The position numbers and the translations under genes are program-made. From the sequence record PQ471516.1: DNA of 64,000 nucleotides; one strand, 5' to 3'. Of this stretch, positions 42,696 to 59,384 are shown piece by piece (within the stretch, counting starts at the first letter, position 1; each line of letters begins with the position of its first letter). Below the pieces are notes generated by a model that had not been told where the DNA came from, did no database searches, and worked only from the letters and a program-made list of their open reading frames with translations.

Positions 42696-42720
42696 AAAGC
42701 CAGTACAAAGTACTGGCTTT
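42696..42720. terminator. bidirectional terminator closing the propeller array
   Basis: AAAGCCAGTAC-AAA-GTACTGGCTTT. Confidence 0.9.
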
Positions 42721-42723
42721 ATT

Positions 42724-43929
42724 TTATATACCACGACTGGGTATTTGATATAATTGGAATTTAGTGTAGTAATCAGAAACTGTCGTCCCTGCTGCTTGTG
42801 GGATATAGCCACTCAAATACACATCCCCTTGATTATCCATATACACTGTTGTACATTCACTTGAACAGAATAACTCGGTGTTAGATACTTTAGGAGCATC
42901 AACTGGTGTTACAAATGTAGTACTTGATGTTGTATTACCGCGACCGAGCTTACCATACGTGTTTATACCACACATATAAAGTGAATCGGCAGTTTTAACC
43001 GTAAGCCCACCATATGTTAATGAATTTGATTTCATTTCCATATCATCTGATATTGGTAGAGTGGAGATAGTGGATAATACTGTCCAAGAATTAGCGGATG
43101 AACCATTACCCAAGTTACCATCGGACTGAATCCCACTTGCACGAACTGTATATGTATTATTCGTGTTGTGTTTATATACAACCCATGATGCACTCCCACC
43201 GAGTTCATAATGTATAACAGTATTGTTGGCGAATGCACCCATTTGTGTCCATACTCTAATGTTAGTTGCATCATTACTTATACCAAGAGAACCCCATGTG
43301 TTTTGACCAGTGACCCAAAGTGTTTTATCAATTTTTTGCACAATCACTGCACTTGAACCTGTTTTAACACTATCCACATTCGTATTAATTGACGTAAAAG
43401 TTGATAATCTTGTGGTTGTGTTATTACCAAAATATCCCTGTGTATTCGCCCCCATTCCATATAGCGTACCATTTTCAAGTAAAACAAAAATACCCTCACC
43501 TACAAGTTGAATGTCCTTAATTTGGGACAATTGTGTAGCATTGAATACTGATGTAAAATATGAAGTACAATCAGTATAAGTACTGGCAGTACTTAAACCT
43601 GCACCAATAGCTTTACCAACCCCACTATAATAAAATTTATTATCTTCAGTTTGGATTAAATTAAAAGTACCTTGGGCTGTTCTGAAACGTTTTACATTTT
43701 GGTATATTAAAGTCCATTCTTTTACTTTCGCATTATGTACACCATTTCCGAATCCATAGTTTTGTGAAGTAGTTCCACCTATACCCATTAAGTCTCCATT
43801 TTTATATAATAGTAAGAGTGCTGTCGCTGGAATTACTGACGCACTATAACCATTGTACATAAAGATTTCTTTCACTTCAGGAACTTTCATTTTATTAGCG
43901 TACTTAACCATTCTTGTAAAAGGTAACAT
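42724..43929 (-). CDS. RCC1/BLIP-II-like beta-propeller, array gene 1 (tag MLPFTRMVKYAN)
   Basis: GQNTWGSLG and GINTYGKLGRG repeats. Confidence 0.85.
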   Translation of the reverse strand: MLPFTRMVKYANKMKVPEVKEIFMYNGYSASVIPATALLLLYKNGDLMGIGGTTSQNYGFGNGVHNAKVKEWTLIYQNVKRFRTAQGTFNLIQTEDNKFYYSGVGKAIGAGLSTASTYTDCTSYFTSVFNATQLSQIKDIQLVGEGIFVLLENGTLYGMGANTQGYFGNNTTTRLSTFTSINTNVDSVKTGSSAVIVQKIDKTLWVTGQNTWGSLGISNDATNIRVWTQMGAFANNTVIHYELGGSASWVVYKHNTNNTYTVRASGIQSDGNLGNGSSANSWTVLSTISTLPISDDMEMKSNSLTYGGLTVKTADSLYMCGINTYGKLGRGNTTSSTTFVTPVDAPKVSNTELFCSSECTTVYMDNQGDVYLSGYIPQAAGTTVSDYYTKFQLYQIPSRGI

Positions 43930-44001
43930 AAAATCCTCCTTTATTCATTATACTATATTTAGCCAAAAAGGAAAAGCCAGTACTTGAGTACTGGCATTAT
44001 A
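43930..44001 (-). repeat. array spacer R1 (terminator-late promoter-SD)
   Basis: GCCAGTAC-TCAA-GTACTGGC-T tract-TAAATATAGTATAAT-AAGGAGG. Confidence 0.9.
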
Positions 44002-45345
44002 TTATTGTAAAGGTATTTCAGTTAAGGTGCTATATTGTGTTCCGTTATATATACCCCTCCAGTATAATTTACCTTCAGTACTAATAACTAATAAACCATA
44101 TGTTGTAAACCCTAGAGTTCCTCCGACATACATAGCATCTTTTATTCTAATACCAATGTCTTCATATGTAAACTCTGATACTTCACCAGCATTCCACGCT
44201 GGACTGTAATAATAATCAGTATAAACACCATGTGCTTTATATAGGGACGTCAATCCAGGTTCAAAAATTACAGTTCCGCAGTAGTTCATTCTTATTTTAG
44301 TACTGGATGAAGTTGGTATATTACCAAAAATATTATCTTTTAACCCAGTAGTTAGAACGTTGAAACCACCACCAATGGAGTTAACGTTATTCACGCCACT
44401 TAGACTCATACCAACGTTGTATCCCATGCAATACACACTACTGCTACCATTCCAGTAAGAAAAACCGCCGCCACGACCACAACGATATAATTGTGAATTT
44501 GAACAGTACATCATACCTTCGTTTGATGCGTCATAGTCGTCTGCTGTTCCAATTGTAGCTACAGTAGTCCAAGTTTTAATTACTTGGTTTGCACTAGCTG
44601 GTGTTTGTATGCCATATCTGATATTATATCCCTTACCGACTATGGTCCCATCTAATAATTTGGCATACAGTACTGGTCTAGCCCCATTATAATAAACGTT
44701 ATTATGTGACATATCAATTGTACTTCGTAATGAAACTGCTTTTTGTGTCAATTGGTTATCTTTAGTAAAAGATGAAAAGTAGTAATCTGCTGTGGAGTTG
44801 TTTATTAAACCCTGAAAGGACTGACCCATATACCAGACTTCTCCGTTTGAGTTCAATGCTGCCAAAATACAACTATATTTGGATGTGTACCCAGTATTAG
44901 TGCCTGGACCTTTATCATACCCACCACTGAATACCATATCAACGACATCACCAACGCTAGTGAAATATGACGAAACATCGATGAATCCAGATGTTAAAAA
45001 TGGTGCAGTCGTCATCCCTGTATTTGTGAATATTCCATTTGCATATACACCACAAAAATTATACGAACCATCAATATCCTGTACTATGATACCATTAGAA
45101 AGTAACCAAAAGTTTTTTACATTTTTACGAACCAATTCAACACCTGCACCATTATTAGGAGTTATTCCAAATGTAATTGCTTTAGTTGTGCCCATGCCAT
45201 ATAAATTCCCATTGGTTGCTAATATTGCACCAAGCCAGTTTCCACCTCCATTACTATTACGACCCATACCAATGGAATCGAATTTCTTTACAGTTGGAGC
45301 TTCTACTGTATTCCCATAATCAAATAATCTAACAAAAGGTAACAT
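44002..45345 (-). CDS. beta-propeller, array gene 2 (MLPFVRLFDYGN)
   Basis: Divergent RCC1-like repeats. Confidence 0.85.
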   Translation of the reverse strand: MLPFVRLFDYGNTVEAPTVKKFDSIGMGRNSNGGGNWLGAILATNGNLYGMGTTKAITFGITPNNGAGVELVRKNVKNFWLLSNGIIVQDIDGSYNFCGVYANGIFTNTGMTTAPFLTSGFIDVSSYFTSVGDVVDMVFSGGYDKGPGTNTGYTSKYSCILAALNSNGEVWYMGQSFQGLINNSTADYYFSSFTKDNQLTQKAVSLRSTIDMSHNNVYYNGARPVLYAKLLDGTIVGKGYNIRYGIQTPASANQVIKTWTTVATIGTADDYDASNEGMMYCSNSQLYRCGRGGGFSYWNGSSSVYCMGYNVGMSLSGVNNVNSIGGGFNVLTTGLKDNIFGNIPTSSSTKIRMNYCGTVIFEPGLTSLYKAHGVYTDYYYSPAWNAGEVSEFTYEDIGIRIKDAMYVGGTLGFTTYGLLVISTEGKLYWRGIYNGTQYSTLTEIPLQ

Positions 45346-45355
45346 ATATTCCTCC

Positions 45356-46535
45356 TTAAACTTGTGGTAGTGGATATTCTGTTAAAGTCCATGTTCCAAC
45401 AACTGTTCCAATTGGTGACCTACCCGTGTAATATAATTTATTATCCGCATACACAAATAATGCACCATCATTGGCAGCAACCAATGAGGTATCTGGATCA
45501 AATACCAAAGAGCTTGGAAATTGTGTTTGAACGAAAACAGACGCATTGTTAGTAGAGTTGATACCGAGTTGCCCCTGGTTATTATACCCAGTACCAAAAA
45601 TACGTTTCCCATTTCTATACAATATACCCCTTGAACTTTGCGAATGTAGTGGTATAAATTCAAAATCGGAAACATCAGTTAATTGTAAATAAGTACTTTG
45701 TGGAGTTAATGATGTCTTATTAGTATTGGTTGTAATTCCATTACCTAATTGTCCGCACTACTTGTGCTCCTACGCCATATAGCGGATAAGTACCATCTGA
45801 ATAAAGAACTATACCCAACATATTAGTATGTGAAAAAATATCAATGGGATATTTCCCAGTACCAAAATCATACTTTGTCCAACTCGTTAATGTAGCCGAA
45901 GCAGCACCAGTTAACAACGTACCAGAAGTAGTTTTGCCACATCTCCACGCAGTATTATCATTCTTAATTATCCAAGTTGGACTATTAAAAAATGAACTAA
46001 CCTTTTTGACATTAATATTAACCTGAGTTAATGATGTAAGCATTTCTGAAGTAGTACCTAACTCATATGTAGAATTGTCACCTATAGCATAAAGAATCCC
46101 ACTATTTGTCAGTACAAACATATTACGAGCATTAGGATATATCTCTTTAATATTATCTATATCGATACTAGAAAAATAAGAAGTACATTCAACAAATGTA
46201 GTACTTTGTACAGGACTTGATGTACCTGTCCAAATATCCCAACCTGCATAATAAAATTTATTATCATTTGTCTGTACTAAACTAAATGAAGCATTCCTGG
46301 TGCACCAGAAATTTTTCACATTTTGCATTAAGAGAACCCAGTTGTTCTGTGTAGTAGTATCTCCAAGTCCGAAAATACCAGCGTTGTTTCCTCCTATACC
46401 CCATAAATCACCATTCTTATACAGAAGCATTAATGTATTGTTGATAAACGCCGATGGTGCTTGCATCTTAATTACATTAGATTCATAAACAGGTTTAATA
46501 TTCCCGTACTTAACCATTCTAGCAAAAGGTAACAT
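45356..46535 (-). pseudogene. beta-propeller, array gene 3, frameshifted near 45757
   Basis: GAQ|GQLGNG broken by one extra base; the downstream frame continues to 45356. Confidence 0.75.
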
Positions 46536-46606
46536 ATATTCCTCCTTTATTCATTATACTATATTTAATCAAAAAGAAAAGCCAGTACTTGAGTACTGGC
46601 TTTATC
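46536..46606 (-). repeat. array spacer R2
   Basis: Near-identical to R1. Confidence 0.9.
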
Positions 46607-47758
46607 TCAATAAACATCCCAAGGTAATGGTGTCTTTCTAAACCCATACCTAGTTGCGTTCTGCCCATCTCCGGCAATGTATCTACCTGTACCACACTGA
46701 TATAATTCAGTACTGCTACATATCGCACCACCAATAGTACCACTACCCCACTGAGTTATATTGGAATATAATATTGGCAAATCACTACATTTAGTATATA
46801 ATGCAACAGTAGCAGCACCACTCGCACCACCAAAAACACTTCGGTTCGAACCCGTGTAATATATACCATCTGGACTCATAAATGCGGAAGTATAAGTTGT
46901 ACTACAATCCACTGGACTTCTTATATTATTAAGATCACTTGGGTATACCCTAGCACCATATGTGTATACATTACCTGTAGTAGTAATACCATTACCTAAC
47001 TGACCATTATTTTGTCCACCACATGTAACTAACGATCCACTACCAGAAACAATGGCAGTAGCATTATAAGAAGTACCTATAACAATAGAAGCTCCCGCCA
47101 ATAGGTATGGGGCAGGAACTCCGGCTGCATTCCCCTGACCTAATTCACCATTGACATTTCTTCCCCATCCGTATACAGAAGTGGTATCCAATTGGCATAG
47201 TACTGAACCATAACTAAACGTATATCGTATATCCTTCACTGCCGATGGTAAACCACTAACTTTAGTTGCAACACTAATAATGCCTGAAACGCCTGTAACT
47301 CCAGCGTTCGCGTTCATATTACGTCCATATGCATATAAAGAGCCATCAGCAGTTTTAATATGCATCATGCCATCTGTGCAATATAATGTATCTATACTAC
47401 CCACTGCAACCTCTCCCATACTGGACGTTATATCGTTCCACCCAAGCGTTGTAGTACTAGAAATTAAGTTATTTCCGGCGTAAAGTATTCTATTATCATT
47501 AGTAACTACTACTGTATAATTGGCAGTAACGCCAATTAATCTAACTTTCTCGTATATCTTAGACCACATTCCTATTGAATTTGTGTTAGTATCCAGAAAC
47601 CCCAACTGACCAGCGGTATTATATCCAATACCCCACACATCACCTTCACTATCCAATAACACTTCATGGGAAAAACCAATCTTAAAATCTTTTATCGTTG
47701 GTGTTTCTGGAACAGGTTTAATATTTCCGTACTTAACCATTCTTGCAAAAGGTAACAT
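46607..47758 (-). CDS. beta-propeller, array gene 4 (MLPFARMVKYGN)
   Basis: Start moved; GYNTAGQLG, GRNVNGELG. Confidence 0.85.
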   Translation of the reverse strand: MLPFARMVKYGNIKPVPETPTIKDFKIGFSHEVLLDSEGDVWGIGYNTAGQLGFLDTNTNSIGMWSKIYEKVRLIGVTANYTVVVTNDNRILYAGNNLISSTTTLGWNDITSSMGEVAVGSIDTLYCTDGMMHIKTADGSLYAYGRNMNANAGVTGVSGIISVATKVSGLPSAVKDIRYTFSYGSVLCQLDTTSVYGWGRNVNGELGQGNAAGVPAPYLLAGASIVIGTSYNATAIVSGSGSLVTCGGQNNGQLGNGITTTGNVYTYGARVYPSDLNNIRSPVDCSTTYTSAFMSPDGIYYTGSNRSVFGGASGAATVALYTKCSDLPILYSNITQWGSGTIGGAICSSTELYQCGTGRYIAGDGQNATRYGFRKTPLPWDVY

Positions 47759-47828
47759 ATTCCCTCCTTTATTCATTATACTATATTTAATCAAAAAGAA
47801 ATGCCAGTACTTGAGTACTGGCATTATG
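47759..47828 (-). repeat. array spacer R3
   Basis: Near-identical to R1. Confidence 0.9.
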
Positions 47829-49019
47829 TTATAACTGTCTCGGTGTATCCAGTACATATCTAGTTGTGCTAGGACCACCATCATCATAAGTTCCGGTTGA
47901 ATATATATTTTTCATATCAGCAGTTAGGAAAGTACGATACGAACCGCGATATATTTTTATTTTATCATACATAGAATATGTTATTTCTGACGGCAATGGA
48001 CATGCAGTAAATTTACCAATGGTAACATTAGAACCAACACCTAATGTACCAGCATAACCACTCGCATTTAAACCAGTTGCATATACACCATTACTCGTAA
48101 CTAGTATACTAGATTGTGCTACATATCCAGTATGGATTGAATAATAAGTTCCTGATGGTAATGTAGTACTATTATTCCCTAATACTGCTAGTGCTGTACT
48201 ATTCGTGGTGTTATTACCCCATGCCCCATTATTAGCGTTACCACCTACTAGGAACTGACGTGCTCCTGTACTTGGATTCTCTACTAAAGCACTGACAGCA
48301 CCAATTGAACAACCAGTATATTGTAATGTTTTTGTATATGTGGTACTTGGCTTATACAAAGTATATTCATTAAATGGTGTCCATGTGGTACTAGTACTTA
48401 TACCAGATGTACTACCACCAATATATAAATTATTTTGTGTATCAAAAAACATTACACAGTAATTTGTTGACTGTATTTGTGCAATATCTACATCTGGTGT
48501 TACCGCTTTAACAAATGAACCATCTGATATTTGATAAGTAGTTCCTGTACCATCTGCGAATTGTCTAGCACTATTCCACCCTGTACTCCATATTGTATTA
48601 TTATCCATTAAGAAAGTAAACCACGTAGTACCTGCATACATCTGTTTAATTGAAGTACTTGAACTTTGTGTGTACAAATTTTCAATATATTGGTTATAAC
48701 TTAAAAATGATGTAGTACTAGTTTCTAAACCAATATGACTACCATATCCACAATAAAAATAATTTAAGTTCTTATCTTGAACTAACAAAGTTCCTTGGGT
48801 CATCCAGCAATCTTTGACATTTTCTCTAATTAATGTCCACGACCTTACTGCATTATTATTTCCTCTACCAAACTTCCCAAAACTATTACTGCCTCGTGCG
48901 TATAGTTGACCGTCGGTATAAAGTACAACAACCTCAGTATCAGTTGGTATTATTTTCTTAATTTGAAGAGGTTCAGGTGTGATATTCCCATAATCAAACA
49001 ATCTAACAAAAGGTAACAT
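47829..49019 (-). CDS. beta-propeller, array gene 5
   Basis: GSNSFGKFGRG, TIWSTGWN. Confidence 0.85.
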   Translation of the reverse strand: MLPFVRLFDYGNITPEPLQIKKIIPTDTEVVVLYTDGQLYARGSNSFGKFGRGNNNAVRSWTLIRENVKDCWMTQGTLLVQDKNLNYFYCGYGSHIGLETSTTSFLSYNQYIENLYTQSSSTSIKQMYAGTTWFTFLMDNNTIWSTGWNSARQFADGTGTTYQISDGSFVKAVTPDVDIAQIQSTNYCVMFFDTQNNLYIGGSTSGISTSTTWTPFNEYTLYKPSTTYTKTLQYTGCSIGAVSALVENPSTGARQFLVGGNANNGAWGNNTTNSTALAVLGNNSTTLPSGTYYSIHTGYVAQSSILVTSNGVYATGLNASGYAGTLGVGSNVTIGKFTACPLPSEITYSMYDKIKIYRGSYRTFLTADMKNIYSTGTYDDGGPSTTRYVLDTPRQL

Positions 49020-49029
49020 ATTTCTCTCC

Positions 49030-50160
49030 TTAATTTAGTAATGCCCCTGGCAAATCCACTTTGACGAATTGTGCATATGCTGAGGAATTTTGATCAAAGT
49101 TTGGTCCCAATCCATAAAATGAGCTAATGCCGTCTTCATTTGTGTATATGATATAAACGTTCTTTACATCATTTCCGCATATAAATCGAATGTCTTTCGT
49201 TTGTGTTCCCGCTGGAACATTACGAAGGTTAACAACGCCATTACTTGCATTGTTATCAGCCGACGCAATTGGTAATTGATTTTGATCATATTGACCACGC
49301 ATATTTTTTGCATCTAAACCAAACACAGTATTTGATACCGCACCAACTTTCAAAAATGAACCAAAACTATTATTGAATGACTTTGGAAATTTACCACTAT
49401 AAACACTTCTCCCATCTGATAATACCGCTGAACTGAATGCCCCGCTATTCGATATGGCAAATTCATTGTAAGGAAGTGTACCCATTTTGGTATATACAGA
49501 ATATGAATTAGTGGAAGTATTATCAATAATCTTATTACCATTATATCCAATACCATACTGGTATCCGTCTGCATCTTGAACTATACACAAAGGACCACTT
49601 GGGGTTTGTGTCAACGAAACAACACGTTCAACTTGTATATCACCAAATGTATTTCTTCGCCATGTTCTATCTATTATAGTACTAGTATTACCCAAAGATA
49701 ATGCCACACTATATAATAGATTGTTTTCAGTAAAAATGGCAACATAATATGCGTGGTTAATAACTTGCTTCATCCCAGCATCAATAACTTCCTGTGGAAT
49801 ATGATCAGTAACATCCAACCAATCAAGGTTAGATGATGCAATATCTGGAGTACTGAATTTGTCAAATCTAGTTGAGCCACAAACTAGCACTCTATCATCA
49901 TTTGTCAAAGCCACTGTGCTAGTCTGCATATTAGAACTGAATGATTTAACATTACTAATGTTAGACTTGTACCAACCCTTATCAGCAGCACCCACCGTGA
50001 ATCCGGTTCCCATTGATCCACTTGTACTTGTACCATAAGCCCACATCTCACCACTATATGTTAGTGCCATACAGTGGCTTCCATTTGCTTGGAAATCCTT
50101 TATACCAGTGGGAGCAACCACTGTATTCCCATAATCAAACATTCTAACAAAAGGTAACAT
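49030..50160 (-). CDS. beta-propeller, array gene 6
   Basis: Start moved to MLPFVRMFDYGN. Confidence 0.85.
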   Translation of the reverse strand: MLPFVRMFDYGNTVVAPTGIKDFQANGSHCMALTYSGEMWAYGTSTSGSMGTGFTVGAADKGWYKSNISNVKSFSSNMQTSTVALTNDDRVLVCGSTRFDKFSTPDIASSNLDWLDVTDHIPQEVIDAGMKQVINHAYYVAIFTENNLLYSVALSLGNTSTIIDRTWRRNTFGDIQVERVVSLTQTPSGPLCIVQDADGYQYGIGYNGNKIIDNTSTNSYSVYTKMGTLPYNEFAISNSGAFSSAVLSDGRSVYSGKFPKSFNNSFGSFLKVGAVSNTVFGLDAKNMRGQYDQNQLPIASADNNASNGVVNLRNVPAGTQTKDIRFICGNDVKNVYIIYTNEDGISSFYGLGPNFDQNSSAYAQFVKVDLPGALLN

Positions 50161-50235
50161 AACTAAAATCTCCATATAATAATTATAATGTATTTACAAA
50201 AAAATACCAGCACATATTTCAGTACTGGTATAATG
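50161..50235 (-). promoter_or_regulatory. variant array spacer (terminator + TAAATACATTATAAT + GGAG)
   Basis: TACCAG...CTGGTA-T7 hairpin; same promoter shape. Confidence 0.75.
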
Positions 50236-51417: not shown

Positions 51418-51489
51418 AATTCCCTCCTTTATTCATTATACTATATTTAATCAAAAAGAAATACCAGTACTCAAGTACTGGCATTGTGT
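51418..51489 (-). repeat. array spacer R4
   Basis: Near-identical to R1. Confidence 0.9.
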
Positions 51490-52668
51490 TTATCTAAAAG
51501 GTACGCACTTTTTGAATTTAAATATATATCCAGTCTCACCTTGTTCAGTGAAGTACCCAGGGTTTCCAGTCCAGTATAAATCCTCACCTATACTAACTAC
51601 CGATACTGAACCATTACCAATTGAACCAAACCACTCAACATGTGATAAGTCAACACTATCATCAAAGAATTCTATTGGTAATATTGAACCATAATTCCCA
51701 GAGACTGCGTTGCGGCCTAAACCAGCACCATTAGAATTATATCCCTTACCATTCGTATTAATAATGTTAGTACTGGATTTTATTGCATTAACATAGGATA
51801 CTGGTGAAAGTTTATCGAATGAATTTGCTGTTATATCGGTATAGGGATTTGTAGTAAATGATGATCTTATGATACCAGTATTTTCAGACCCACCTATAGT
51901 CAACTGTGTGTTCCAACCAGCCGCCATTAAAGACAAAGCAGATGTACTACTTTGAACAATCAAACGTGTTACCCATCGTGTAGCTTGTACTGCAATTACC
52001 TGAGAACTTCCAAGATTCAATGTAGTAAAAGTAGTAATTGGATTATTATCACCTGTTCCTAATTGATAAAAAGTATTCTCACCACAACGATAATATATAC
52101 CATCTTTTATATAGTGAAAGTTTCTGCTCATTTCACTAGATGCAATTGCAGTTACACTAGTGTCAATTAAGAGTGGAGATGTAATTGGTGCAGTTGCTGT
52201 ACCCAATTCACTTGCACCATTCATGCCTATACCATATAACTGACTGTCACTTGTGAGTATTAGCATAGAATTGTTAGTACTGGTTGTAGATGTTATTTTT
52301 ATATCTTTTATAGAACTCGGAGAAATAGATCCAAAATATGATTCACAACGAGTCCATGTTGAAACAGAAGATGATATACCAAAAACTGAGTTAGTCCCAC
52401 TATAGTACAATTCCCCTTGTTTTGTTCTAATTATAGTACAATATAAAGAACTCCAGAAATCATCAACACTATAAGGACATAAAACCCATCTATTAAAAAA
52501 GATGAACCAGTAACTCCCATTTTTGCTGATTGGTTTCCGTCCACGCATATATAATGACCCGTCACTATATAATACGCTTATTGAATTTTCATCACTATTA
52601 ATTTTAACAACAGTATCTTTGACAGGGGCAACATTCCCATAATCAAACAATCTAACAAAAGGTAACAT
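51490..52668 (-). CDS. beta-propeller, array gene 8
   Basis: GMNGASELG, GENTFYQLG. Confidence 0.85.
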   Translation of the reverse strand: MLPFVRLFDYGNVAPVKDTVVKINSDENSISVLYSDGSLYMRGRKPISKNGSYWFIFFNRWVLCPYSVDDFWSSLYCTIIRTKQGELYYSGTNSVFGISSSVSTWTRCESYFGSISPSSIKDIKITSTTSTNNSMLILTSDSQLYGIGMNGASELGTATAPITSPLLIDTSVTAIASSEMSRNFHYIKDGIYYRCGENTFYQLGTGDNNPITTFTTLNLGSSQVIAVQATRWVTRLIVQSSTSALSLMAAGWNTQLTIGGSENTGIIRSSFTTNPYTDITANSFDKLSPVSYVNAIKSSTNIINTNGKGYNSNGAGLGRNAVSGNYGSILPIEFFDDSVDLSHVEWFGSIGNGSVSVVSIGEDLYWTGNPGYFTEQGETGYIFKFKKCVPFR

Positions 52669-52739
52669 ATATTCCTCCTTTATTCATTATACTATATTTA
52701 ATCAAAAAGAAAAGCCAGTACTCAAGTACTGGCATTTTT
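52669..52739 (-). repeat. array spacer R5
   Basis: Near-identical to R1. Confidence 0.9.
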
Positions 52740-53909
52740 TTAAATTGGCGAGTCCAACACAAACTCTAACGTATTTGGACCACCATAAGTCACATATGTA
52801 CCTGAACTATATACGAAATTACCATCAGTAATATAAGTACGATAGTATGATCCAGCCATTTGTGCCTTACTATAATCAAACCCATCAGGTACGATTGCTT
52901 TGGTATATACTAATGCATTCTTAGATGTACCAATACCTAACATACCAGCTTGCGTAGATTGATTGTAGCCGCAACAATATATACCATCTGTTGTAGCAAT
53001 AACTTGGTTATAATATGAAGTATTGTTAGCAATACTTACTACATCACCGGGTGGCATTAGTGAAGCAGTTTGAACCTCAAATGCTCTATAATCACTGAGA
53101 GAACCATTTGTCCCATCTGCTTGTGCACCAAATATTCTCGAACCGCCATTTGCGATGATGGTTTTACCAGTGGGATCAGTACCAATTGCCATTGCCATTG
53201 AAGTACTATTCTCCACATAGTACTTGATATTAATTGTATTTCTTAAGCTGGTAGGAGCACCATAATATATATTATATAACTTACCTCCTGAACTTGTAAC
53301 TGCATTTACTCTTCCTGTATAAAATAGCCATCCTTGGTTTGTAACATAACCGTGCATTAAATTACTTGCAAACAATTTAACAGGTAATTGATTTGCTGCG
53401 GTCGGAACAGTACTTTTGACGAATCTACGAGCAATATTGTTAGTTGTTGTCCCATCACCCAACTGACCATCCGACCCTACTCCAGTACTCCATATTGTTT
53501 GGTCTGATAGTAACACACTTGTAGTCTGATAACTAACGGCTATATCTAATATTGGTAATGTTAATGTATTGAATGTTGGCATAGCAGAAGTCCATATTGA
53601 TACTGCTGCCCCTGGCATACCAACAGTTGTTGAACTTCCACTGTACCATATTTCATTATTGCTTTTCTTAACAACTATCGACGTGGTTCCCATCCAAAAA
53701 TCTTCAACACCAGAAGTACTAAAAGTCCATGTAGTAACAGTATTTTCGTGACCTAAACCCAAAATACCATTTGTATTATCACCACGCACATATAAATCAC
53801 CACTGTTTGTTAAAACAGCAACATTATAGTTGTTAGTAAGTATTTTTTTAATATTTGGTTTAGCAGGTGCAACATTTCCATAATCAAACAATCTCACAAA
53901 AGGTAACAT
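52740..53909 (-). CDS. beta-propeller, array gene 9 (closest to gene 5)
   Basis: Start moved; GDNTNGILG, GSDGQLGDG. Confidence 0.85.
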   Translation of the reverse strand: MLPFVRLFDYGNVAPAKPNIKKILTNNYNVAVLTNSGDLYVRGDNTNGILGLGHENTVTTWTFSTSGVEDFWMGTTSIVVKKSNNEIWYSGSSTTVGMPGAAVSIWTSAMPTFNTLTLPILDIAVSYQTTSVLLSDQTIWSTGVGSDGQLGDGTTTNNIARRFVKSTVPTAANQLPVKLFASNLMHGYVTNQGWLFYTGRVNAVTSSGGKLYNIYYGAPTSLRNTINIKYYVENSTSMAMAIGTDPTGKTIIANGGSRIFGAQADGTNGSLSDYRAFEVQTASLMPPGDVVSIANNTSYYNQVIATTDGIYCCGYNQSTQAGMLGIGTSKNALVYTKAIVPDGFDYSKAQMAGSYYRTYITDGNFVYSSGTYVTYGGPNTLEFVLDSPI

Positions 53910-53978
53910 AATTCCTCCTTTATTCATTATACTATATTTAATCCAAAAGAAAAGCCAGTACTTTGTACTGGCATTATA
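53910..53978 (-). repeat. array spacer R6
   Basis: Loop AAA, otherwise as R1. Confidence 0.9.
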
Positions 53979-55118
53979 TTATTTCCACGGTAGAAGTGAA
54001 TCAGGAACCCTTGTTGGTACAGTAGTTGAAGACATTCCAGTAAGATTGGGTACACCACATGTGTATAAATTATCATATTCATCCACTAACATCGTATAGG
54101 AATAGCTCTTACAAAAACTACTAACATTACGAACTTCTAATGCAGTAAGATCCATTTCAGTGAATGATGTTATATACATATCAGTTGTACCAATACCACA
54201 TTGACCATTTGAATTAAGACCACATGAAAATAACTTATTATTATTTTTAATTATACAGGATGGCCCTGTAAGGTTTGTCCCAAGCTCACCCACCAACTCT
54301 ACTTCGCCTTGGAATGATAAATTTGGAATTAATGTACTCATTGGGGCTACTGACCTATTTCCTGTACCTGCTTGTCCATATTCATTAGTAGATGCAACTT
54401 TAACATTACCATCATTAAGAAATATATAAGAAGTTTCATTTGTATTTACTGCTTTAATTGCATTACTAATTGAAGTATCTTGTGTAAATATGAGCAAGTT
54501 TTGTGTCGTCGTTCCTGATACAAACGTATTACCTGCATACCAATATGAACCATCATTTAGAACTAATCCAGTACTACGTATTGCACAACCAGCACTGATA
54601 ACATTTTCTATTGTACTATAGGTGAATTGTGTAACGCTTGAAGTTGATCCATTTCCAAAAACACCACCAGTGCCAGCACCACAGTAGAACCACTTTCCAT
54701 TTTTTAAAAATACACGCATACACGAAGATATTACAATACTATCAATATCATCTGCACTGACTCCGATATCAGCAAAGTGCTGTGTTACATCAATCCAAAC
54801 ACCGTTAGTGTTTGAAGATATCACCGGAATAACAGTACGTCTACCAGTGTACCAAATAGTACCATCTTTCTTAATAGCAATCGTTCCTTGTACCCCGACC
54901 CAATATCGTACAATATTTGAGTTGACAAGAGTCCATTCAGTTGAAGAATCCAATGAACCATTACCACCTTGACCATATGCTGAAGAACCAAACCAGTATA
55001 GATAGCCATTTGTGTGTAAATAAAATTTGGCATCAGCAGAGCATTGTAACCTATTTTTAGGTAGGATCGGTTCAGGAGCGATATTCCCGTAATCAAACAA
55101 TCTAACAAAAGGTAACAT
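53979..55118 (-). CDS. beta-propeller, array gene 10
   Basis: GSSAYGQGG, GLNSNGQCG. Confidence 0.85.
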   Translation of the reverse strand: MLPFVRLFDYGNIAPEPILPKNRLQCSADAKFYLHTNGYLYWFGSSAYGQGGNGSLDSSTEWTLVNSNIVRYWVGVQGTIAIKKDGTIWYTGRRTVIPVISSNTNGVWIDVTQHFADIGVSADDIDSIVISSCMRVFLKNGKWFYCGAGTGGVFGNGSTSSVTQFTYSTIENVISAGCAIRSTGLVLNDGSYWYAGNTFVSGTTTQNLLIFTQDTSISNAIKAVNTNETSYIFLNDGNVKVASTNEYGQAGTGNRSVAPMSTLIPNLSFQGEVELVGELGTNLTGPSCIIKNNNKLFSCGLNSNGQCGIGTTDMYITSFTEMDLTALEVRNVSSFCKSYSYTMLVDEYDNLYTCGVPNLTGMSSTTVPTRVPDSLLPWK

Positions 55119-55130
55119 ATTTCCTCCTTA

Positions 55131-56027
55131 TTATTTAAAAACATACTGCGTATTAACACGAGTACCATTGTCAAAACCAAGTACGTAAAATATTTCAGCA
55201 CTATTATTAGAACCAAATAATGCACCCGTACTATTACTCAAAGTAGTATTAACTGCTAAGGCAATCCATATGTCTTCTTCTGTATCGTATCTCAATAAAT
55301 TTAATGCACCAAACGATACTGCATATATATGTTTATCATATCTATTGTAAATTATTTTACTAGGGTTAGGACCACCAACCGATGCTATGTTCGACCATAC
55401 CCCACTCTCTATATGATATTTTTGTGCAGTACTAACACCTTGACCCGTAATATATATGTAAGTACCATCCGTACACATATCACCACCTCCAGTGTTATTT
55501 GTACCATCGCTTGTACCTAATGATGACCATGTATTAGTACTAGGAGTATAACTGTATAACGAATTATTAGAAGGAGATCCCCACAAATATAACTTATCCC
55601 CAGCATTAATCATCTTACTATACGCCAGTTGACTAGGCTTCCCAATACTGTTAGTGTTCAGAATCCAGGTATTTGTACTTATATTATATACATAAAAATT
55701 ATTAGAACTATTACCACTACCACCAAACAAATATATTTTTCCCTGATAAGCACATAACGCACTACCAAATGTAGATACAGGTGCATTGGCTAATTGTAGC
55801 CACGTTCTAGTAGTTAAATTAAAACTCCATAACTGATTATCCGTCGTCACCGTATTCTGTATACCACCAAATATATAAGCAGTATTCTTTTCCGCATCAT
55901 ATGTATAACCAAAGTTATTTCGTGCTGAAGGTACGGGTGTTGTAGTAAATGGGGATCGTACTCCACCATTGTTGGCATATGGTGGTACAACATTCCCATA
56001 ATCAAACAATCTCACAAAAGGTAACAT
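55131..56027 (-). CDS. Kelch-repeat beta-propeller, array gene 11 (same N-terminal tag)
   Basis: YIFGG...W and IYLFGG...YNISTNTW Kelch repeats; start moved. Confidence 0.88.
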   Translation of the reverse strand: MLPFVRLFDYGNVVPPYANNGGVRSPFTTTPVPSARNNFGYTYDAEKNTAYIFGGIQNTVTTDNQLWSFNLTTRTWLQLANAPVSTFGSALCAYQGKIYLFGGSGNSSNNFYVYNISTNTWILNTNSIGKPSQLAYSKMINAGDKLYLWGSPSNNSLYSYTPSTNTWSSLGTSDGTNNTGGGDMCTDGTYIYITGQGVSTAQKYHIESGVWSNIASVGGPNPSKIIYNRYDKHIYAVSFGALNLLRYDTEEDIWIALAVNTTLSNSTGALFGSNNSAEIFYVLGFDNGTRVNTQYVFK

Positions 56028-56098
56028 AATTCCTCCTTTATTCATTATACTATATTTACCCCAAAAAGAAATGCCAGTACCTGAGTACTGGCATTATA
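56028..56098 (-). repeat. array spacer R7
   Basis: Near-identical to R1. Confidence 0.9.
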
Positions 56099-57208
56099 TT
56101 ATTTTGGTAAATCAATTTTAGTAAAGACTGCAACATCTGCACTTGCACCTGGTATTGCATAAAATATACCAGTACTATATACATCCCCGTCTTTGGTTAA
56201 TAATGATGTTAATCCGTCACTAAAAGCAACATCACTAATCTCACTAACTTCTACAGGTAATTGTAAATTGGTAGCACTATAGATAGCACCCGTTTGAGAA
56301 TTGTTTAATCCCAAACCACGGTTTGCCCCAATACCTTTCTGATATGCACTGGTTAGTATAATTTGCGTAGCCGTGCTTGTTGCCTCTGAATTTGTCATAA
56401 ACAAAGGTGAATTATTAGGTAAAGTACTTACAGGAACTGCTTTGAATGTAGTTGAATCTGAACTAAGAAAGTTTGGAGTTGTACCACATGTGAAATATGA
56501 TGTAGCATTATAGTAATTGAGTGTATGACCACCAATAGCTGCATCTATTACACCAGAACTACGCAGTCCCCAAATGTTAACTTGTGTTCTGTCCCCTGTG
56601 CCATGTAACCCACGGTCATTCCACCCTGAACTATATAACTTATTATCTAAGGTAATATACATACTATCATTGGAAGTTGACATCACTTTACGCACATTAG
56701 AAGCACATAGTGTTAATGTATATATTGATGAAGAACCAATCCCCAATACACCACGGTATCCATTAGCCCCAGCACCATAGAGTACTGAACTTGAACTGAG
56801 TACAAATATTACACCACCATTGCATACAATATTAGCAATTTGATTCACAGGAATTGTATTTGTAAACCACTCCGTTCTATCAACTAATGTAGTACTGTAA
56901 GAAGTTGTTGTTGATGATGTGAACCAATATGTTTCACCGGATGTCCATATCGTATTGTCATTTTTAATAATAACAAGTGTTCGTCCTCCAGTGAAAAAAT
57001 TAGAAACATCTGCACTTACTAATATCCATGAAGATACCGTGTTTTTATTACCATTTCCAGATTCACCACCTTGATTTCTGCCTATGTAATATAATTCATG
57101 TGAATCAGTCAATACGAATTGACCTTGTGTAGAAGCACCAACTTTAATTATATTTTTAGGACCAGGGGTAATATTCCCATAATCAAACAGTCTTACAAAA
57201 GGTAACAT
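56099..57208 (-). CDS. beta-propeller, array gene 12
   Basis: GRNQGGESG, GWNDRGLHG. Confidence 0.85.
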   Translation of the reverse strand: MLPFVRLFDYGNITPGPKNIIKVGASTQGQFVLTDSHELYYIGRNQGGESGNGNKNTVSSWILVSADVSNFFTGGRTLVIIKNDNTIWTSGETYWFTSSTTTSYSTTLVDRTEWFTNTIPVNQIANIVCNGGVIFVLSSSSVLYGAGANGYRGVLGIGSSSIYTLTLCASNVRKVMSTSNDSMYITLDNKLYSSGWNDRGLHGTGDRTQVNIWGLRSSGVIDAAIGGHTLNYYNATSYFTCGTTPNFLSSDSTTFKAVPVSTLPNNSPLFMTNSEATSTATQIILTSAYQKGIGANRGLGLNNSQTGAIYSATNLQLPVEVSEISDVAFSDGLTSLLTKDGDVYSTGIFYAIPGASADVAVFTKIDLPK

Positions 57209-57217
57209 AATTCCCTC

Positions 57218-58420
57218 CTATTGTTGCCATAACTGCGTTGGCATTAATGTTAGTGTAGTAATACTATAAGTGCCATCAGGCAATCTACCACCATTACCAT
57301 TCCAGCCACCACATGCATATAATTTATAATCTTTAGTAATTATTATGGTTCTGCTCCAATCTTTAGATGCCATAAGAACATTGTCATAACCACCACTTAT
57401 TGCACTAAGATTAAAAATATTCCAGGTTCTAACTAATGTATTAGTTCCATTACCTTCTTGACCATATGAGTTAGCACCACTACTTCTAACATATGATGGG
57501 TATTGTGCCATAGGTGAACCAATTGATGAAGTTCCCATATTACTTGGACAAATAAAATTACTGTACTTACTTACATCAACCGTGACCGATGTGTTCCTAA
57601 TTGGTGTTAGCTGATTTACAGATGTAGTCGTACCATTACCAGCTTCTCCTGTATTGTTAACCCCGCTATAATATACAGGCCCACCAGTAGTAAACCACCA
57701 AGTAACATTGTATGTAGCACTAATATGTTCTACATCACTAATCACATATTTGTTCAAATATATCATAGAACTACCACCACAACCACTTTCACCGAAGTTA
57801 TCCTTACCACAAAACCATGCCTGTTTATTTGATTTAATATAGTGCGTTCCTTGTAATGAACATGCCATATCAATAACTTCACCCATATTAGTCATAACTG
57901 TTAGTGTAGGTATGGAATTTTGATTACCAGACCCACATTCACCATTAGTATTTTTTCCACACGCAATTACTCTATTATCGGTTAATAATATTCTAGTACT
58001 TTCACCTATATATACACTCTTGATCATATTAGCCATGACGCCAATTTTATTAAATGAAGAAGTAACATCAGTCCATGTTCTCAAATAACCACCAACAGGT
58101 GTTGCATCTCCATAATCAGAAAATGCAGCCACCGACCCAGTGTAGTATATTTTATTATCCAAATCAATCATCAATGAACCATGAACACCAAGCCAATAGG
58201 CTGCACAGTTCCTTGCAAGTACTGTAAATGACGAAACTGCTGCTGAATTCCCAAGACCCAATTGAGACAAGTTATTACTACCATAACCATATAAAGTATT
58301 AGTTGGGCTATGTAGATACATACAGTTTGTATAATGTTGTTGTAAAACATTTGAGAACTCTATTGGTTCTGGCCCTGGTGCAATATTCGCGTACTTAACC
58401 ATTCTAGCAAAAGGTAACAT
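57218..58420 (-). CDS. beta-propeller, array gene 13 (MLPFARMVKYAN)
   Basis: GSNNLSQLG, GKNTNGECG; closest to gene 10. Confidence 0.85.
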   Translation of the reverse strand: MLPFARMVKYANIAPGPEPIEFSNVLQQHYTNCMYLHSPTNTLYGYGSNNLSQLGLGNSAAVSSFTVLARNCAAYWLGVHGSLMIDLDNKIYYTGSVAAFSDYGDATPVGGYLRTWTDVTSSFNKIGVMANMIKSVYIGESTRILLTDNRVIACGKNTNGECGSGNQNSIPTLTVMTNMGEVIDMACSLQGTHYIKSNKQAWFCGKDNFGESGCGGSSMIYLNKYVISDVEHISATYNVTWWFTTGGPVYYSGVNNTGEAGNGTTTSVNQLTPIRNTSVTVDVSKYSNFICPSNMGTSSIGSPMAQYPSYVRSSGANSYGQEGNGTNTLVRTWNIFNLSAISGGYDNVLMASKDWSRTIIITKDYKLYACGGWNGNGGRLPDGTYSITTLTLMPTQLWQQ

Positions 58421-58520
58421 ATATTCCTCCTTTATTTGTTATATCATATTTACCCAAAATAAAAACCCTTGACACGCTTCTTGGACTAATGTAGAATAGA
58501 AAGAAATTAAGGAGAAATGT

Positions 58521-58766
58521 ATGAACAATTTAACAGATCACTACCAAGAACTTAGTCAAAGTACTAAGAACTATATGAGCTACATGAACGCAGAAGATTT
58601 CGCAGTCTTCCTCGGAAAATTCTGTGCAATCAATACCCTCCAAAAAAGTACCAGTACTACAAGTGTACTTATGTTGAATTGCTTTATAGAGAACATTCTG
58701 GATGAACTTCAAAGCCCAAACGAAAGTAAACGATTCATGAACCTTTTGTTACTGGCATCTATATGA
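58521..58766 (+). CDS. small protein, family H (divergent)
   Basis: AAGGAG SD after a sigma70 promoter. Confidence 0.75.
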   Translation: MNNLTDHYQELSQSTKNYMSYMNAEDFAVFLGKFCAINTLQKSTSTTSVLMLNCFIENILDELQSPNESKRFMNLLLLASI

Positions 58767-59176: not shown

Positions 59177-59184
59177 CAGAACAA

Positions 59185-59376: not shown

Positions 59377-59384
59377 GGAACACT

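What the first reader, a model, noticed from the sequence alone, without database searches (positions are those of the whole stretch)
42724..58420. A constant 12-aa N-terminal tag shared by unrelated folds, in two allelic types
Seen: all 13 proteins begin MLPF-x-R, either MLPF(A/T)RMVKY(G/A)N (genes 1, 3, 4, 13) or MLPFVR(L/M)FDYGN (nine genes), followed by a short Pro-containing linker. The Kelch protein carries the same tag as the RCC1-like ones, so the tag is independent of fold. Known precedents: the T4 capsid-targeting sequence and the docking N-terminus of T-even gp38. Inference: an address peptide that loads any passenger onto or into the virion, with two types for two sockets; potentially usable for display.
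Basis: partly seen in the sequence, partly recalled or inferred. Interest (0 to 1): 0.85.

Follow-up and report, generated by a model that had tools for sequence, protein, structure and literature searches.

The report
Shared N-terminal virion tag in jumbo phage
Thirteen neighbouring genes of a giant E. coli phage, and about ninety relatives in kindred phages, begin with the same 12-residue peptide in front of interchangeable sugar- or protein-binding domains of different folds; nearly all tagged proteins tested by published mass spectrometry are in the virus particle, so the peptide is most likely an undescribed docking tag.

Summary
The window is the last 64 kb of Escherichia phage Turkey5, an Asteriusvirus of 351 kb. 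All 13 minus-strand genes at 42724-58420 start MLPFxR..Y(G/A)N followed by a proline linker. Tags are 81% identical between paralogues; the rest of the proteins is 19% identical.

- It has at least 48 sequence variants on at least 11 BLAST-unlinked passenger families: RCC1-like propellers, Kelch propellers, concanavalin/LamG-like lectins and others.
- It occurs in Asteriusvirus, Mimasvirus (GAP32, CBB), Serratia phage BF and its Erwinia relatives, and uncultured kin.
- A profile search of 1.84 billion proteins found 88 clusters, nearly all with the motif at residue 1.

AlphaFold leaves tag and linker unstructured on both propeller types. Codons differ between genera, so selection acts on the protein. 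Published virion proteomes contain 8 of 10 tagged CBB proteins, 6 phAPEC6 proteins and 3 GAP32 proteins. Tag-spanning peptides survive in mature CBB virions, so the tag is not removed as the T4 capsid-targeting sequence is.

"Two types for two sockets" is not established. Orthologues swap tag types between genomes, intermediates exist, and some genomes carry one class only. The docking partner and the location, outside or inside the particle, remain unknown.

The parts
42724..58420 (-). Array of 13 tagged genes, a minus-strand island inside plus-strand small genes
42724..43929 (-). Gene 1, 401 aa, tag MLPFTRMVKYAN (tag DNA 43894-43929), RCC1-like
44002..45345 (-). Gene 2, 447 aa, tag MLPFVRLFDYGN; no Pfam hit, divergent member of PHROG 4219 (RCC1-like)
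45741..46535 (-). Gene 3, 264 aa, tag MLPFARMVKYGN, truncated RCC1-like propeller
45356..45622 (-). 88-aa RCC1-like fragment in another frame, the detached C-terminal part of gene 3
46607..47758 (-). Gene 4, 383 aa, tag MLPFARMVKYGN, RCC1-like
47829..49019 (-). Gene 5, 396 aa, tag MLPFVRLFDYGN, RCC1-like; the phAPEC6 orthologue (97% identical) carries MLPFARMMNYGN
49030..50160 (-). Gene 6, 376 aa, tag MLPFVRMFDYGN, RCC1-like
50236..51417 (-). Gene 7, 393 aa, tag MLPFVRMFDYGN, RCC1-like
51490..52668 (-). Gene 8, 392 aa, tag MLPFVRLFDYGN, RCC1-like
52740..53909 (-). Gene 9, 389 aa, tag MLPFVRLFDYGN, RCC1-like
53979..55118 (-). Gene 10, 379 aa, tag MLPFVRLFDYGN; predicted RCC1/UVR8-like propeller; residues 1-18 unstructured in the AF2 model
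55131..56027 (-). Gene 11, 298 aa, tag MLPFVRLFDYGN, Kelch propeller; residues 1-20 unstructured in the AF2 model
56099..57208 (-). Gene 12, 369 aa, tag MLPFVRLFDYGN, RCC1-like
57218..58420 (-). Gene 13, 400 aa, tag MLPFARMVKYAN, RCC1-like
43947..43962 (-). Promoter-like motif CTAAATATAGTATAAT, 18-33 nt upstream of gene 1
46553..46568 (-). Promoter-like motif TTAAATATAGTATAAT upstream of gene 3
47775..47790 (-). Same motif upstream of gene 4
51435..51450 (-). Same motif upstream of gene 7
52686..52701 (-). Same motif upstream of gene 8
53926..53941 (-). Same motif upstream of gene 9
56044..56059 (-). Motif GTAAATATAGTATAAT upstream of gene 11
58438..58453 (-). Variant motif GTAAATATGATATAAC upstream of gene 13; coordinates derived from the printed upstream sequence
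42696..42720 (-). Terminator-like hairpin at the end of the array (palindromic, read on both strands)
43976..43995 (-). Terminator-like hairpin GCCAGTACTCAAGTACTGGC plus T-run, between genes 2 and 1
46578..46603 (-). Terminator-like hairpin between genes 4 and 3
47800..47825 (-). Terminator-like hairpin between genes 5 and 4
50204..50231 (-). Terminator-like hairpin between genes 7 and 6
51460..51485 (-). Terminator-like hairpin between genes 8 and 7
52714..52733 (-). Terminator-like hairpin between genes 9 and 8
53954..53972 (-). Terminator-like hairpin between genes 10 and 9
56070..56095 (-). Terminator-like hairpin between genes 12 and 11

Best explanation
The motif M-L-P-F-x-(R)-hydrophobic-hydrophobic-x-Y-(G/A)-N, at the very N-terminus and followed by a flexible proline-containing linker, is a lineage-specific virion-incorporation tag. 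It belongs to Rak2-like jumbo myoviruses: Asteriusvirus, Mimasvirus, Serratia phage BF and its Erwinia relatives, and uncultured kin.

Proposed mechanism:
- The tag is fused to interchangeable globular binding modules: RCC1-like and Kelch propellers, concanavalin/LamG-like lectins and several unassigned folds.
- It stays on the mature protein.
- It is unfolded on its own and most likely becomes ordered by binding as a linear peptide to a conserved structural protein of the particle.
- The result is a varied, strain-specific set of low-copy adhesin-like heads on the virion. A plausible site is the hair-like fibres on tail sheath and capsid, or the long tail fibres.
- New cassettes arise by duplication and by recombination at or just after the tag.

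Shown here:
- The motif, its breadth, its independence of fold and its strictly N-terminal position.
- Selection at protein level.
- Virion association of tagged proteins, and retention of tag residues 7-20 in virions.
- Swapping of the tag between orthologues.

Inferred, not shown:
- That the tag is the docking determinant.
- The identity of the partner.
- An exterior location and an adhesin function.
For: 1. All 13 array genes carry the tag, against 0 expected by chance. Across nine arrays, 99 of 107 ORFs of at least 200 aa carry it. Three of the eight exceptions are near-tags.
2. There are 93 unique tagged ORFs, 48 tag variants and at least 11 passenger families not linked by BLAST. Pfam finds RCC1, Kelch and Laminin_G_3. 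Seven different PHROGs are involved.
3. A 30-column profile of tag plus linker finds 88 representative clusters among 1.84 billion proteins. About 80 have the match starting at residue 1-3. One is a 688-aa RCC1+Kelch fusion.
4. Cellular Kelch homologues lack the tag. Homologues of the CBB_536 passenger in other phage groups have different N-termini.
5. AF2 models the propellers with confidence (pLDDT 83-84), while residues 1-18 and 1-20 fall below 50 with no secondary structure.
6. Conserved residues are encoded by different codons in different genera: CCT/CCA/CCG, TTT/TTC, TTA/CTT, AGA/AGG/CGA, TAC/TAT.
7. Virion mass spectrometry:
   - CBB_247, 536, 537, 548, 549, 551, 552 and 553, out of 55 detected among 554 ORFs. 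p = 2e-7.
   - phAPEC6 gp003, 005, 006, 007, 009 and 010.
   - GAP32 gp001 (mass spectrometry, as cited by the CBB paper), and gp002 and gp531 (RefSeq 'virion structural protein').
8. The peptides LFEYANVIIPPNYK, YANVIVEYATK and LLQYGNK appear in the CBB virion data.
9. The truncated propeller phAPEC6 gp007, orthologue of gene 3, is still found in virions.
10. The 13 proteins have pI 5.0-8.6 and 41-49% N+S+T+G+Y, a surface or receptor-binding type of composition and not a basic DNA-binding one.
11. One bacterial hit in 185,579 species genomes, at a site with no ribosome-binding site, is consistent with chance.
Against: - No experiment or model shows the tag contacting any virion protein. AlphaFold-multimer was not available.
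- Mass spectrometry shows presence in purified particles, not location. Peptide counts are low (1-8).
- Residues 1-6 were never observed, so trimming of the first six residues cannot be excluded.
- CBB_550 and CBB_554, and about half of the phAPEC6 copies, were not detected.
- Within Turkey5 the tag codons are more uniform than codon usage predicts. TTA, CCT and AGA are each used 13 of 13 times, against 48%, 36% and 43% usage elsewhere. The rare GGG is favoured. Recent gene conversion or 5' mRNA constraints therefore add to the apparent conservation.
- GAP32 carries tagged virion proteins but has not been reported to have hairs, so the hairs need not be the docking site.
Confidence: 0.6

Rival explanations
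1. The tag is an internal packaging signal. It directs the proteins into the prohead (capsid interior or inner body), from which they are ejected into the host, as the T4 capsid-targeting sequence does for the polymorphic internal proteins.
For: - A hypervariable array of virion proteins sharing a short N-terminal leader is exactly the T4 internal-protein pattern (established knowledge).
- The phAPEC6 authors suggested that the RCC1-like proteins might organise the packaged DNA or the inner body.
- Mass spectrometry cannot tell inside from outside.
Against: - Tag-spanning peptides persist in mature CBB virions, including an uncleaved L-F-E|Y that would fit a T4-type cleavage site.
- The proteins are not basic: pI 5.0-8.6, K+R about 6%.
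- The passengers are lectin or adhesion-type modules. A comparative review of jumbo phages associates the Laminin G3/concanavalin-fold lectin domains with tail fibres and other virion components.
Confidence: 0.15
2. The tag is recognised by an assembly factor, or mediates self-association. It could be a chaperone handle or an oligomerisation peptide and not a direct plug into a structural socket.
For: - It is unstructured on its own.
- It is conserved irrespective of the passenger.
- The phAPEC6 paper describes the capsid appendages as looking trimeric.
Against: - Diverse stable folds such as propellers and jelly rolls do not normally need a common chaperone.
- Twelve residues is short for a self-sufficient oligomerisation element.
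- The tag is retained in the mature virion.
Confidence: 0.12
3. The conservation is mainly at DNA or RNA level. The first 36 nt would be part of a duplicated expression cassette (promoter, ribosome-binding site, translation-initiation region), or a recombination site kept uniform by gene conversion, with no role for the peptide.
For: - Within Turkey5 synonymous sites of the tag are nearly invariant, beyond what codon usage predicts.
- Upstream region, tag and linker are exchanged as one unit between orthologues, with a homology break at about nt 55-60.
- Seven genes share a 16-nt promoter-like motif and the Shine-Dalgarno site.
Against: - Four genes (2, 5, 10, 12) have no shared upstream cassette yet keep the tag.
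- Across genera the amino acids are kept while codons change at every degenerate position.
- Variable positions 5, 8 and 9 change freely while L2, P3, F4, Y10 and N12 do not.
Confidence: 0.05
4. In Turkey5 the K-class (MLPFxRMVKY) and D-class (MLPFVRxFDY) tags address two different sites. This is a sub-hypothesis within the docking model.
For: - In five mixed genomes the class is mostly constant per orthogroup. OG2, 3 and 20 are always K-class; OG0, 1, 4, 5 and 6 are always D-class.
- Position 9 reverses charge.
Against: - 121Q, phAPEC6 and one metagenomic array have K/N-class tags only. A4 has acidic tags on seven of eight genes, one GRMLV tag and no K-class tag.
- At least seven orthogroups carry different classes in different genomes. 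Hybrids ARMFK, VRMIK, ARMMN and ARIMT occur.
- Mimasvirus tags mix E, Q and K at position 9 within one array.
Confidence: 0.25

Closest known systems
T4 capsid-targeting sequence of the internal proteins (IPI, IPII, IPIII)
   Same: A leader of about 10 residues at the extreme N-terminus, shared by polymorphic, otherwise unrelated virion proteins encoded in a hyperplastic locus. The passenger is exchangeable.
   Different: The T4 leader is cut off by the prohead protease and sends cargo inside the head. Here tag residues 7-20 are found in mature virions, and the cargo is lectin-like and not basic. No sequence relationship was tested or claimed.
Conserved N-terminal anchor modules of phage tail fibres and tailspikes (P22/Sf6 gp9 head-binding domain, T7 gp17 N-terminus, branched receptor-binding proteins of CBA120, G7C, RaK2 and phiKp24)
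   Same: Paralogous receptor-binding proteins keep a common N-terminus that plugs into the particle, while the distal part varies and is swapped by recombination.
   Different: Those anchors are folded domains of about 50-150 residues on trimeric fibrous proteins. Here only 12 residues are conserved, they are predicted unstructured, and the passengers are single globular domains.
Adenovirus fibre N-terminal tail docking on penton base
   Same: A short conserved linear peptide at the N-terminus binds a groove in a capsid protein while the rest of the protein varies between types. This is a functional analogy from established knowledge.
   Different: A eukaryotic virus, a trimeric fibre and no homology. 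The binding mode in the phage is only inferred.
T-even gp38 adhesin docking on the gp37 fibre tip
   Same: An exchangeable adhesin attached through its N-terminal part.
   Different: The gp38 attachment part is a folded domain of more than 100 residues specific to one partner. It is not a 12-residue tag shared by many folds.
Dockerin-cohesin system of cellulosomes
   Same: Many unrelated catalytic or binding modules carry one common docking module and compete for the same sockets on a scaffold.
   Different: Dockerin is a folded calcium-binding domain of about 70 residues in bacteria, usually C-terminal. The resemblance is conceptual only.
RCC1-like 'DNA condensation protein' arrays already reported in 121Q, PBECO4 and phAPEC6
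   Same: These are the same genes. Their multiplicity and virion association are published.
   Different: None of the papers read or searched here mentions the shared N-terminal motif or its presence on Kelch, LamG and other passengers. The 'chromosome or DNA condensation' and 'HERC1 ubiquitin ligase' names are domain-transfer annotations with no support in composition.

Membership tests
T4-type capsid-targeting sequence | Short N-terminal leader shared by otherwise unrelated, polymorphic virion proteins | tested here: met
   The 12-aa motif is found on at least 11 passenger families.
T4-type capsid-targeting sequence | Leader removed by the prohead protease during maturation (cleavage after L/I-x-E) | tested here: not met
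   The tryptic peptides LFEYANVIIPPNYK, YANVIVEYATK and LLQYGNK from mature CBB virions span the tag, including an uncleaved LFE|Y. Residues 1-6 were not observed.
T4-type capsid-targeting sequence | Directs cargo to the scaffolding core or capsid interior | not testable with these tools
   Only presence in whole virions is known.
Tail-fibre / tailspike N-terminal anchor domains | Conserved N-terminus with a variable distal binding part among paralogues | tested here: met
   Tag identity is 0.81 against 0.19 for the rest of the protein. Tags are swapped between orthologues.
Tail-fibre / tailspike N-terminal anchor domains | The anchor is a folded domain of tens to about 150 residues | tested here: not met
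   Conservation ends at residue 12. Residues 1-18 and 1-20 have pLDDT below 50 and no secondary structure.
Tail-fibre / tailspike N-terminal anchor domains | Trimeric fibrous or beta-helical passenger | tested here: not met
   The passengers are predicted as single RCC1-like or Kelch propellers or match Laminin_G_3. The oligomeric state itself was not tested.
RCC1-like repeat proteins | RCC1-like beta-propeller built of RCC1 repeats (canonically seven blades; the blade number was not counted here) | tested here: met
   RCC1 or RCC1_2 repeats score above the Pfam cut-offs in most copies. The AF2 model matches UVR8, RCC1 and HERC2 RLD structures with TM up to 0.76.
RCC1-like repeat proteins | Chromatin/DNA binding or guanine-nucleotide-exchange function (the basis of the 'DNA condensation' annotation) | not testable with these tools
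   There is no supporting feature. pI is 5.0-8.6 and K+R about 6%.
Kelch-repeat propellers | Kelch repeats forming a beta-propeller (canonically six blades; the blade number was not counted here) | tested here: met
   Gene 11 matches PF24681 at 9.6e-36 and several Kelch families above their cut-offs. The AF2 model is all-beta with pLDDT 82.8.
Virion (structural) proteins of Rak2-like phages | Detected in purified particles by mass spectrometry | tested here: inconclusive
   This is shown for tagged orthologues or analogues in phAPEC6, CBB and GAP32. No proteome of Turkey5 itself was available.

The most novel reading that the evidence does not exclude
The tag is a universal plug that binds as a linear peptide to repeated sockets on the hair-like fibres of tail sheath and capsid. 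Each virion would then display a stochastic mosaic drawn from 8-16 different lectin-like heads, a combinatorial adhesin coat. Charge-reversed tag classes (K against D/E at position 9) would sort heads to two different sites in the genomes that carry both. Any protein given residues 1-20 would be displayed on the particle.
Probability: 0.2. Interest if true: 0.85.

Novelty: new variant of a known kind. Interest (0 to 1): 0.68.

Why it matters
- It would explain how giant Rak2-like phages recruit a large, fast-evolving set of unrelated binding modules into one particle. A 12-residue address would replace a dedicated anchor domain.
- It gives a concrete lead to the composition of the unexplained 'hairs' or whiskers of phAPEC6, 121Q and CBB.
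- It corrects misleading annotations. These genes are currently named 'DNA condensation protein', 'regulator of chromosome condensation' or 'E3 ubiquitin ligase HERC1'.
- It defines a searchable signature for virion accessory proteins in metagenomic jumbo phages.
- If the tag is sufficient for loading, it is a very small handle for displaying proteins on a large phage particle.

Tried and rejected
1. **N-terminal 'velcro' strand closing the propeller.** Rejected. AF2 leaves residues 1-18 and 1-20 unstructured while the propellers close without them. The same tag also sits on Laminin_G_3 proteins.
2. **Chance or low-complexity match.** Rejected. There are 13 hits against 0.00 expected.
3. **Purely nucleotide-level conservation.** Rejected as the sole cause. 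Short-term homogenisation within a genome is real, though.
4. **Cleavable targeting leader.** Not supported.
5. **DNA-condensing function.** No support in composition.
6. **A bacterial or prophage origin of the tag.** One hit in 185,579 species genomes, at a site with no ribosome-binding site and with an unrelated downstream ORF, consistent with chance.
7. **Prior description in the literature.** No phage paper contains 'MLPF'. The phAPEC6, CBB, Sharanji and fEgEco12 papers and a comparative review of jumbo phages do not mention the motif.
8. **A strict two-type model.** Contradicted by 48 variants and by genomes with a single class.
9. **Identifying the docking partner.** Not achieved. The CBB/GAP32/RaK2 comparison only narrows candidates to virion proteins that RaK2 lacks (CBB_029, 118, 148/149, 183, 225, 226). 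RaK2 has no homologue listed for GAP32_001 or CBB_247 or for CBB_536, 537, 548, 549, 551, 552 and 553. The RaK2 genome itself was not scanned for the tag.
10. **Complete tag inventory of Turkey5.** Whether the genome carries further tagged genes outside the window was not checked exhaustively. The 10 D-type-like places counted in the record are probably the nine D-class tags plus gene 3, which is my inference from the mismatch counts.

Full report
**Identity of the window.** Bases 50000-58500 match Escherichia phage Turkey5 (PQ471516.1, 351,311 bp, host E. coli Tur5) at 100%. The GenBank gene table places window base 42724 at record base 330035, so the window is the last 64 kb of that record. 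Related records are Asteriusvirus jumbo myoviruses: PBECO4, 121Q, phAPEC6 and others.

**The observation.**
- Thirteen genes lie head to tail on the minus strand between 42724 and 58420, inside a region otherwise transcribed on the plus strand.
- Each begins MLPF-x-R. Four begin MLPF(A/T)RMVKY(G/A)N and nine begin MLPFVR(L/M)FDYGN.
- A degenerate DNA pattern for the tag finds exactly these 13 starts, with none expected in shuffles.
- Every copy has proline within residues 13-20.
- Pairwise identity is 0.81 in the tag and 0.19 elsewhere.
- In an alignment with 121Q and GAP32 relatives, seven of the first twelve columns are invariant. Only two glycines are invariant in the remaining 370-odd columns.
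- Eleven of the twelve non-Kelch proteins match RCC1-like Pfam families. Gene 2 has no Pfam hit but matches the same PHROG, 4219. Gene 11 is a Kelch propeller.
- Gene 3 is truncated at 264 aa, and its C-terminal piece lies in another frame at 45356-45622.

**Expression signals.**
- Genes with an intergenic spacer are preceded by a strong hairpin plus T-run. Nine such terminator-like sites were assigned to the array, out of 24 found in the region against 7.5 expected.
- After the hairpin comes the motif TTAAATATAGTATAAT and then AAGGAGG. This motif occurs seven times in the window, only in the array.
- Genes 2, 5, 10 and 12 follow the preceding gene directly and share only the Shine-Dalgarno site, yet keep the tag.
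- Structural genes of phAPEC6, including the major head protein, carry T4-like (T)ATAAATA motifs upstream. The array motif shares the TAAATA core, which suggests late transcription but does not prove it.

**Breadth of the tag.**
- At DNA level the D-class tag is present in 37 Asteriusvirus-like coliphage and Salmonella-phage records, at 1-13 places each.
- A codon-degenerate pattern scan of IMG/VR and of metagenomes recovered it in several groups:
  - 121Q;
  - GAP32 and CBB (Mimasvirus);
  - Serratia phage BF and its Erwinia relatives;
  - several uncultured contigs of 349-371 kb.
- A scan of one genome from each of 185,579 bacterial and archaeal species gave a single hit, with no ribosome-binding site and an unrelated downstream ORF, consistent with chance.
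- Pooling everything gives 93 unique tagged ORFs with 48 different tag sequences. The consensus is M-L-P-F-x-[R, rarely I/K]-[M/L/I]-[V/F/I/L]-x-Y-[G/A]-N.
- Pattern searches fix the conserved residues by construction, so I also used array membership as ascertainment. In nine arrays, 99 of 107 ORFs of at least 200 aa carry the motif. Three of the eight exceptions are near-tags (R6 to L, or G11 to S) and most of the others look truncated.
- A 30-column profile of tag plus linker was searched against 1.84 billion representative proteins and returned 88 clusters at E of 0.001 or better. Apart from four repeat-type matches and a few mis-called starts, the motif begins at residue 1-3. It is therefore strictly N-terminal.

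**Independence of fold.**
- Passengers fall into at least 11 groups that BLAST does not link.
- Pfam assigns RCC1-like repeats, Kelch repeats and Laminin_G_3 (concanavalin-like lectin). Several groups have no assignment.
- PHROGs places them in seven different families.
- One representative of 688 aa carries an RCC1-like and a Kelch propeller behind a single tag.
- Close phage relatives of the Kelch protein all carry the tag or a near variant (MLPFVRMFEFGN, MFPISIISQYGN, MIPIPRMVQYGN). Cellular Kelch homologues do not.
- Homologues of the CBB_536 passenger in unrelated phage groups (CR8, PCH45, AH06, Salmonella phage 19) align only from residue 10-22 onward and have other N-termini.

**Structure.**
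- AlphaFold2 models of gene 10 (RCC1-like) and gene 11 (Kelch) are confident for the propellers, with mean pLDDT 83.9 and 82.8.
- Residues 1-18 and 1-20 fall below pLDDT 50 with no secondary structure.
- The gene 10 model superposes on UVR8, RCC1 and HERC2 RCC1-like domains with TM up to 0.76.
- The tag is therefore not the closing strand of the propeller. It is a free peptide on a flexible linker.

**Protein or DNA constraint.**
- Across genera the conserved residues are written with different codons. Counts among the 93 ORFs:
  - Pro3: CCT 58, CCA 32, CCC 2, CCG 1.
  - Tyr10: TAC 59, TAT 32.
  - Arg6: AGA 73, AGG 6, CGA 3, CGT 1.
  - Leu2: TTA 87, plus TTG, CTT and CTA.
  - Phe4: TTT 87, TTC 6.
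- Positions 5, 8 and 9 vary freely in amino acid. That is purifying selection on the peptide.
- Within Turkey5, however, TTA, CCT and AGA are each used 13 of 13 times although they make up only 48%, 36% and 43% of their codon families in the rest of these genes. The rare GGG codon is preferred for Gly11.
- The copies within one genome are therefore also kept alike at DNA level, by recent conversion or by 5' mRNA constraints.

**Tag classes.**
- Orthologous passengers that are 78-97% identical carry different tags in different genomes. Gene 5 has MLPFVRLFDYGN, while its phAPEC6 orthologue (97% identical) has MLPFARMMNYGN.
- In such pairs the sequences are unrelated upstream, differ densely through tag and linker, and become nearly identical from about nucleotide 55-60. 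Upstream region, tag and linker were therefore exchanged as a unit.
- A table of 35 orthogroups in 11 genomes shows several patterns:
  - 121Q, phAPEC6 and one metagenomic array have K/N-class tags only.
  - A4 has acidic tags on seven of its eight genes, one GRMLV tag, and no K-class tag.
  - EJP2 has at least three classes.
  - Turkey5, vB_Ec-M-J, BF17 and two metagenomic arrays mix K and D classes, with a partition that is mostly, but not always, constant per orthogroup.
  - Hybrids such as ARMFK occur.
- This fits a tag that co-evolves with a partner and is shuffled by recombination. It does not establish two sockets.

**Link to the virion.**
- The CBB proteome found 55 of 554 gene products in virions. 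Eight of the ten tagged genes are among them: CBB_247, 536, 537, 548, 549, 551, 552 and 553. The hypergeometric p is 2e-7.
- Five of the six virion proteins that CBB has and GAP32 lacks are tagged.
- phAPEC6 gp003, 005, 006, 007, 009 and 010 are in its 62-protein virion proteome, and all start with the tag.
- In GAP32, gp001 was found in virions by mass spectrometry, as cited by the CBB paper. gp002 and gp531 are tagged and annotated 'virion structural protein' in RefSeq.
- The raw CBB peptide table contains LFEYANVIIPPNYK (CBB_536 residues 7-20), YANVIVEYATK (CBB_548 residues 10-20) and LLQYGNK (CBB_553 residues 7-13). The tag is therefore retained in the mature protein, even where L-F-E|Y would fit a T4-type protease site.
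- The truncated propeller gp007 of phAPEC6, orthologue of gene 3, is still detected. This fits loading that does not need an intact passenger.

**What the passengers suggest.**
- The 13 proteins have pI 5.0-8.6, about 6% K+R and 41-49% N+S+T+G+Y. That is unlike basic DNA-packing proteins and like exposed binding modules.
- A comparative review of jumbo phages links Laminin G3/concanavalin-fold lectin domains to tail fibres and other virion components, assigns lectin domains on fibres and surface decorations a role in adhesion, and notes hair-like fibres on 121Q and whiskers on CBB.
- The phAPEC6 and CBB papers could not assign genes to those hairs.
- According to the CBB supplement, RaK2 has no homologue listed for GAP32_001 or CBB_247 or for CBB_536, 537, 548, 549, 551, 552 and 553. 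It also lacks a short list of other CBB/GAP32 virion proteins: CBB_029, 118, 148/149, 183, 225 and 226. Those are reasonable first candidates for the docking partner. This is a lead, not a result.

**Conclusion.**
- The finding is real and, in the papers I could search and read, undescribed.
- The best explanation is a retained, unstructured N-terminal docking tag that recruits interchangeable adhesin-like modules to the particle.
- That the tag is the determinant, what it binds, and whether the proteins sit outside or inside are inferences that need the experiments listed.
- The two-socket idea is possible for mixed genomes but is not supported as a general rule.

Noticed in passing
L048 2453-3115 (CR8_266); L049 795-1439 and 2468-3121 (PCH45); L051 2468-3121 (AH06_288); L050 2420-3073 (SP19_190): Homologues of the CBB_536-type passenger in unrelated phage groups lack the MLPF tag. 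Several instead start MLE(I/N/T/L)(M/L/I)(T/L/M), for example MLEIMTAAQ, MLENLLTGV, MLETILSRK and MLELLMARG. This may be a second, lineage-specific N-terminal tag.
   Followed up: partly
window 45356-46535: Gene 3 is a truncated propeller (264 aa) with its C-terminal piece in another frame. Copies of similar length (269 aa) occur in 121Q and phAPEC6. The phAPEC6 copy, gp007 (30 kDa), was detected in virions.
   Followed up: partly
window 58521-62668, plus strand: Directly beyond the array lies a run of about 18 consecutive small ORFs of 55-81 aa, interrupted by one ORF of 224 aa. It looks like another tandem family.
   Followed up: no
window 40723-41447, plus strand: Two adjacent ORFs of about 120 aa with hydrophobic segments lie upstream of the array. 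They occupy the position of the paralogous 3-TM 'membrane protein' series next to the tagged genes in GAP32 and CBB.
   Followed up: no
P0059 (688 aa, metagenomic representative): A single MLPFPILNQYGN tag is followed by an RCC1-like region and then a Kelch-like region in one protein, a two-module passenger. This reading is from the sequence only; Pfam was not run on it.
   Followed up: no
L037 8122-8637 and L038 1-126 (GAP32 record ends): GAP32_531 (virion structural protein) is annotated from an internal GTG. The gene is split by the ends of the linear record, and its tagged N-terminus (MLPFVKMIKYGN) lies at the other end of the record.
   Followed up: partly
L013 about 18140-18290 (upstream of CBB_554); L014 7106-7216; L016 320-430: Decayed tag remnants occur: MLPFPQLVVL* upstream of CBB_554, and a 36-aa stub MLPFGRMLKYGNIKPTLPEIKKLEPQ... 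in two metagenomic arrays. They show turnover of cassettes.
   Followed up: no
window 42724-58420 (GenBank PQ471516 annotation): The products are named 'E3 ubiquitin-protein ligase HERC1', 'regulator of chromosome condensation' and 'Kelch domain-containing protein 2'. In sister records they are 'DNA condensation protein', 'S-layer protein' or 'X-linked retinitis pigmentosa GTPase regulator'. These are domain-name transfers with no functional support.
   Followed up: yes
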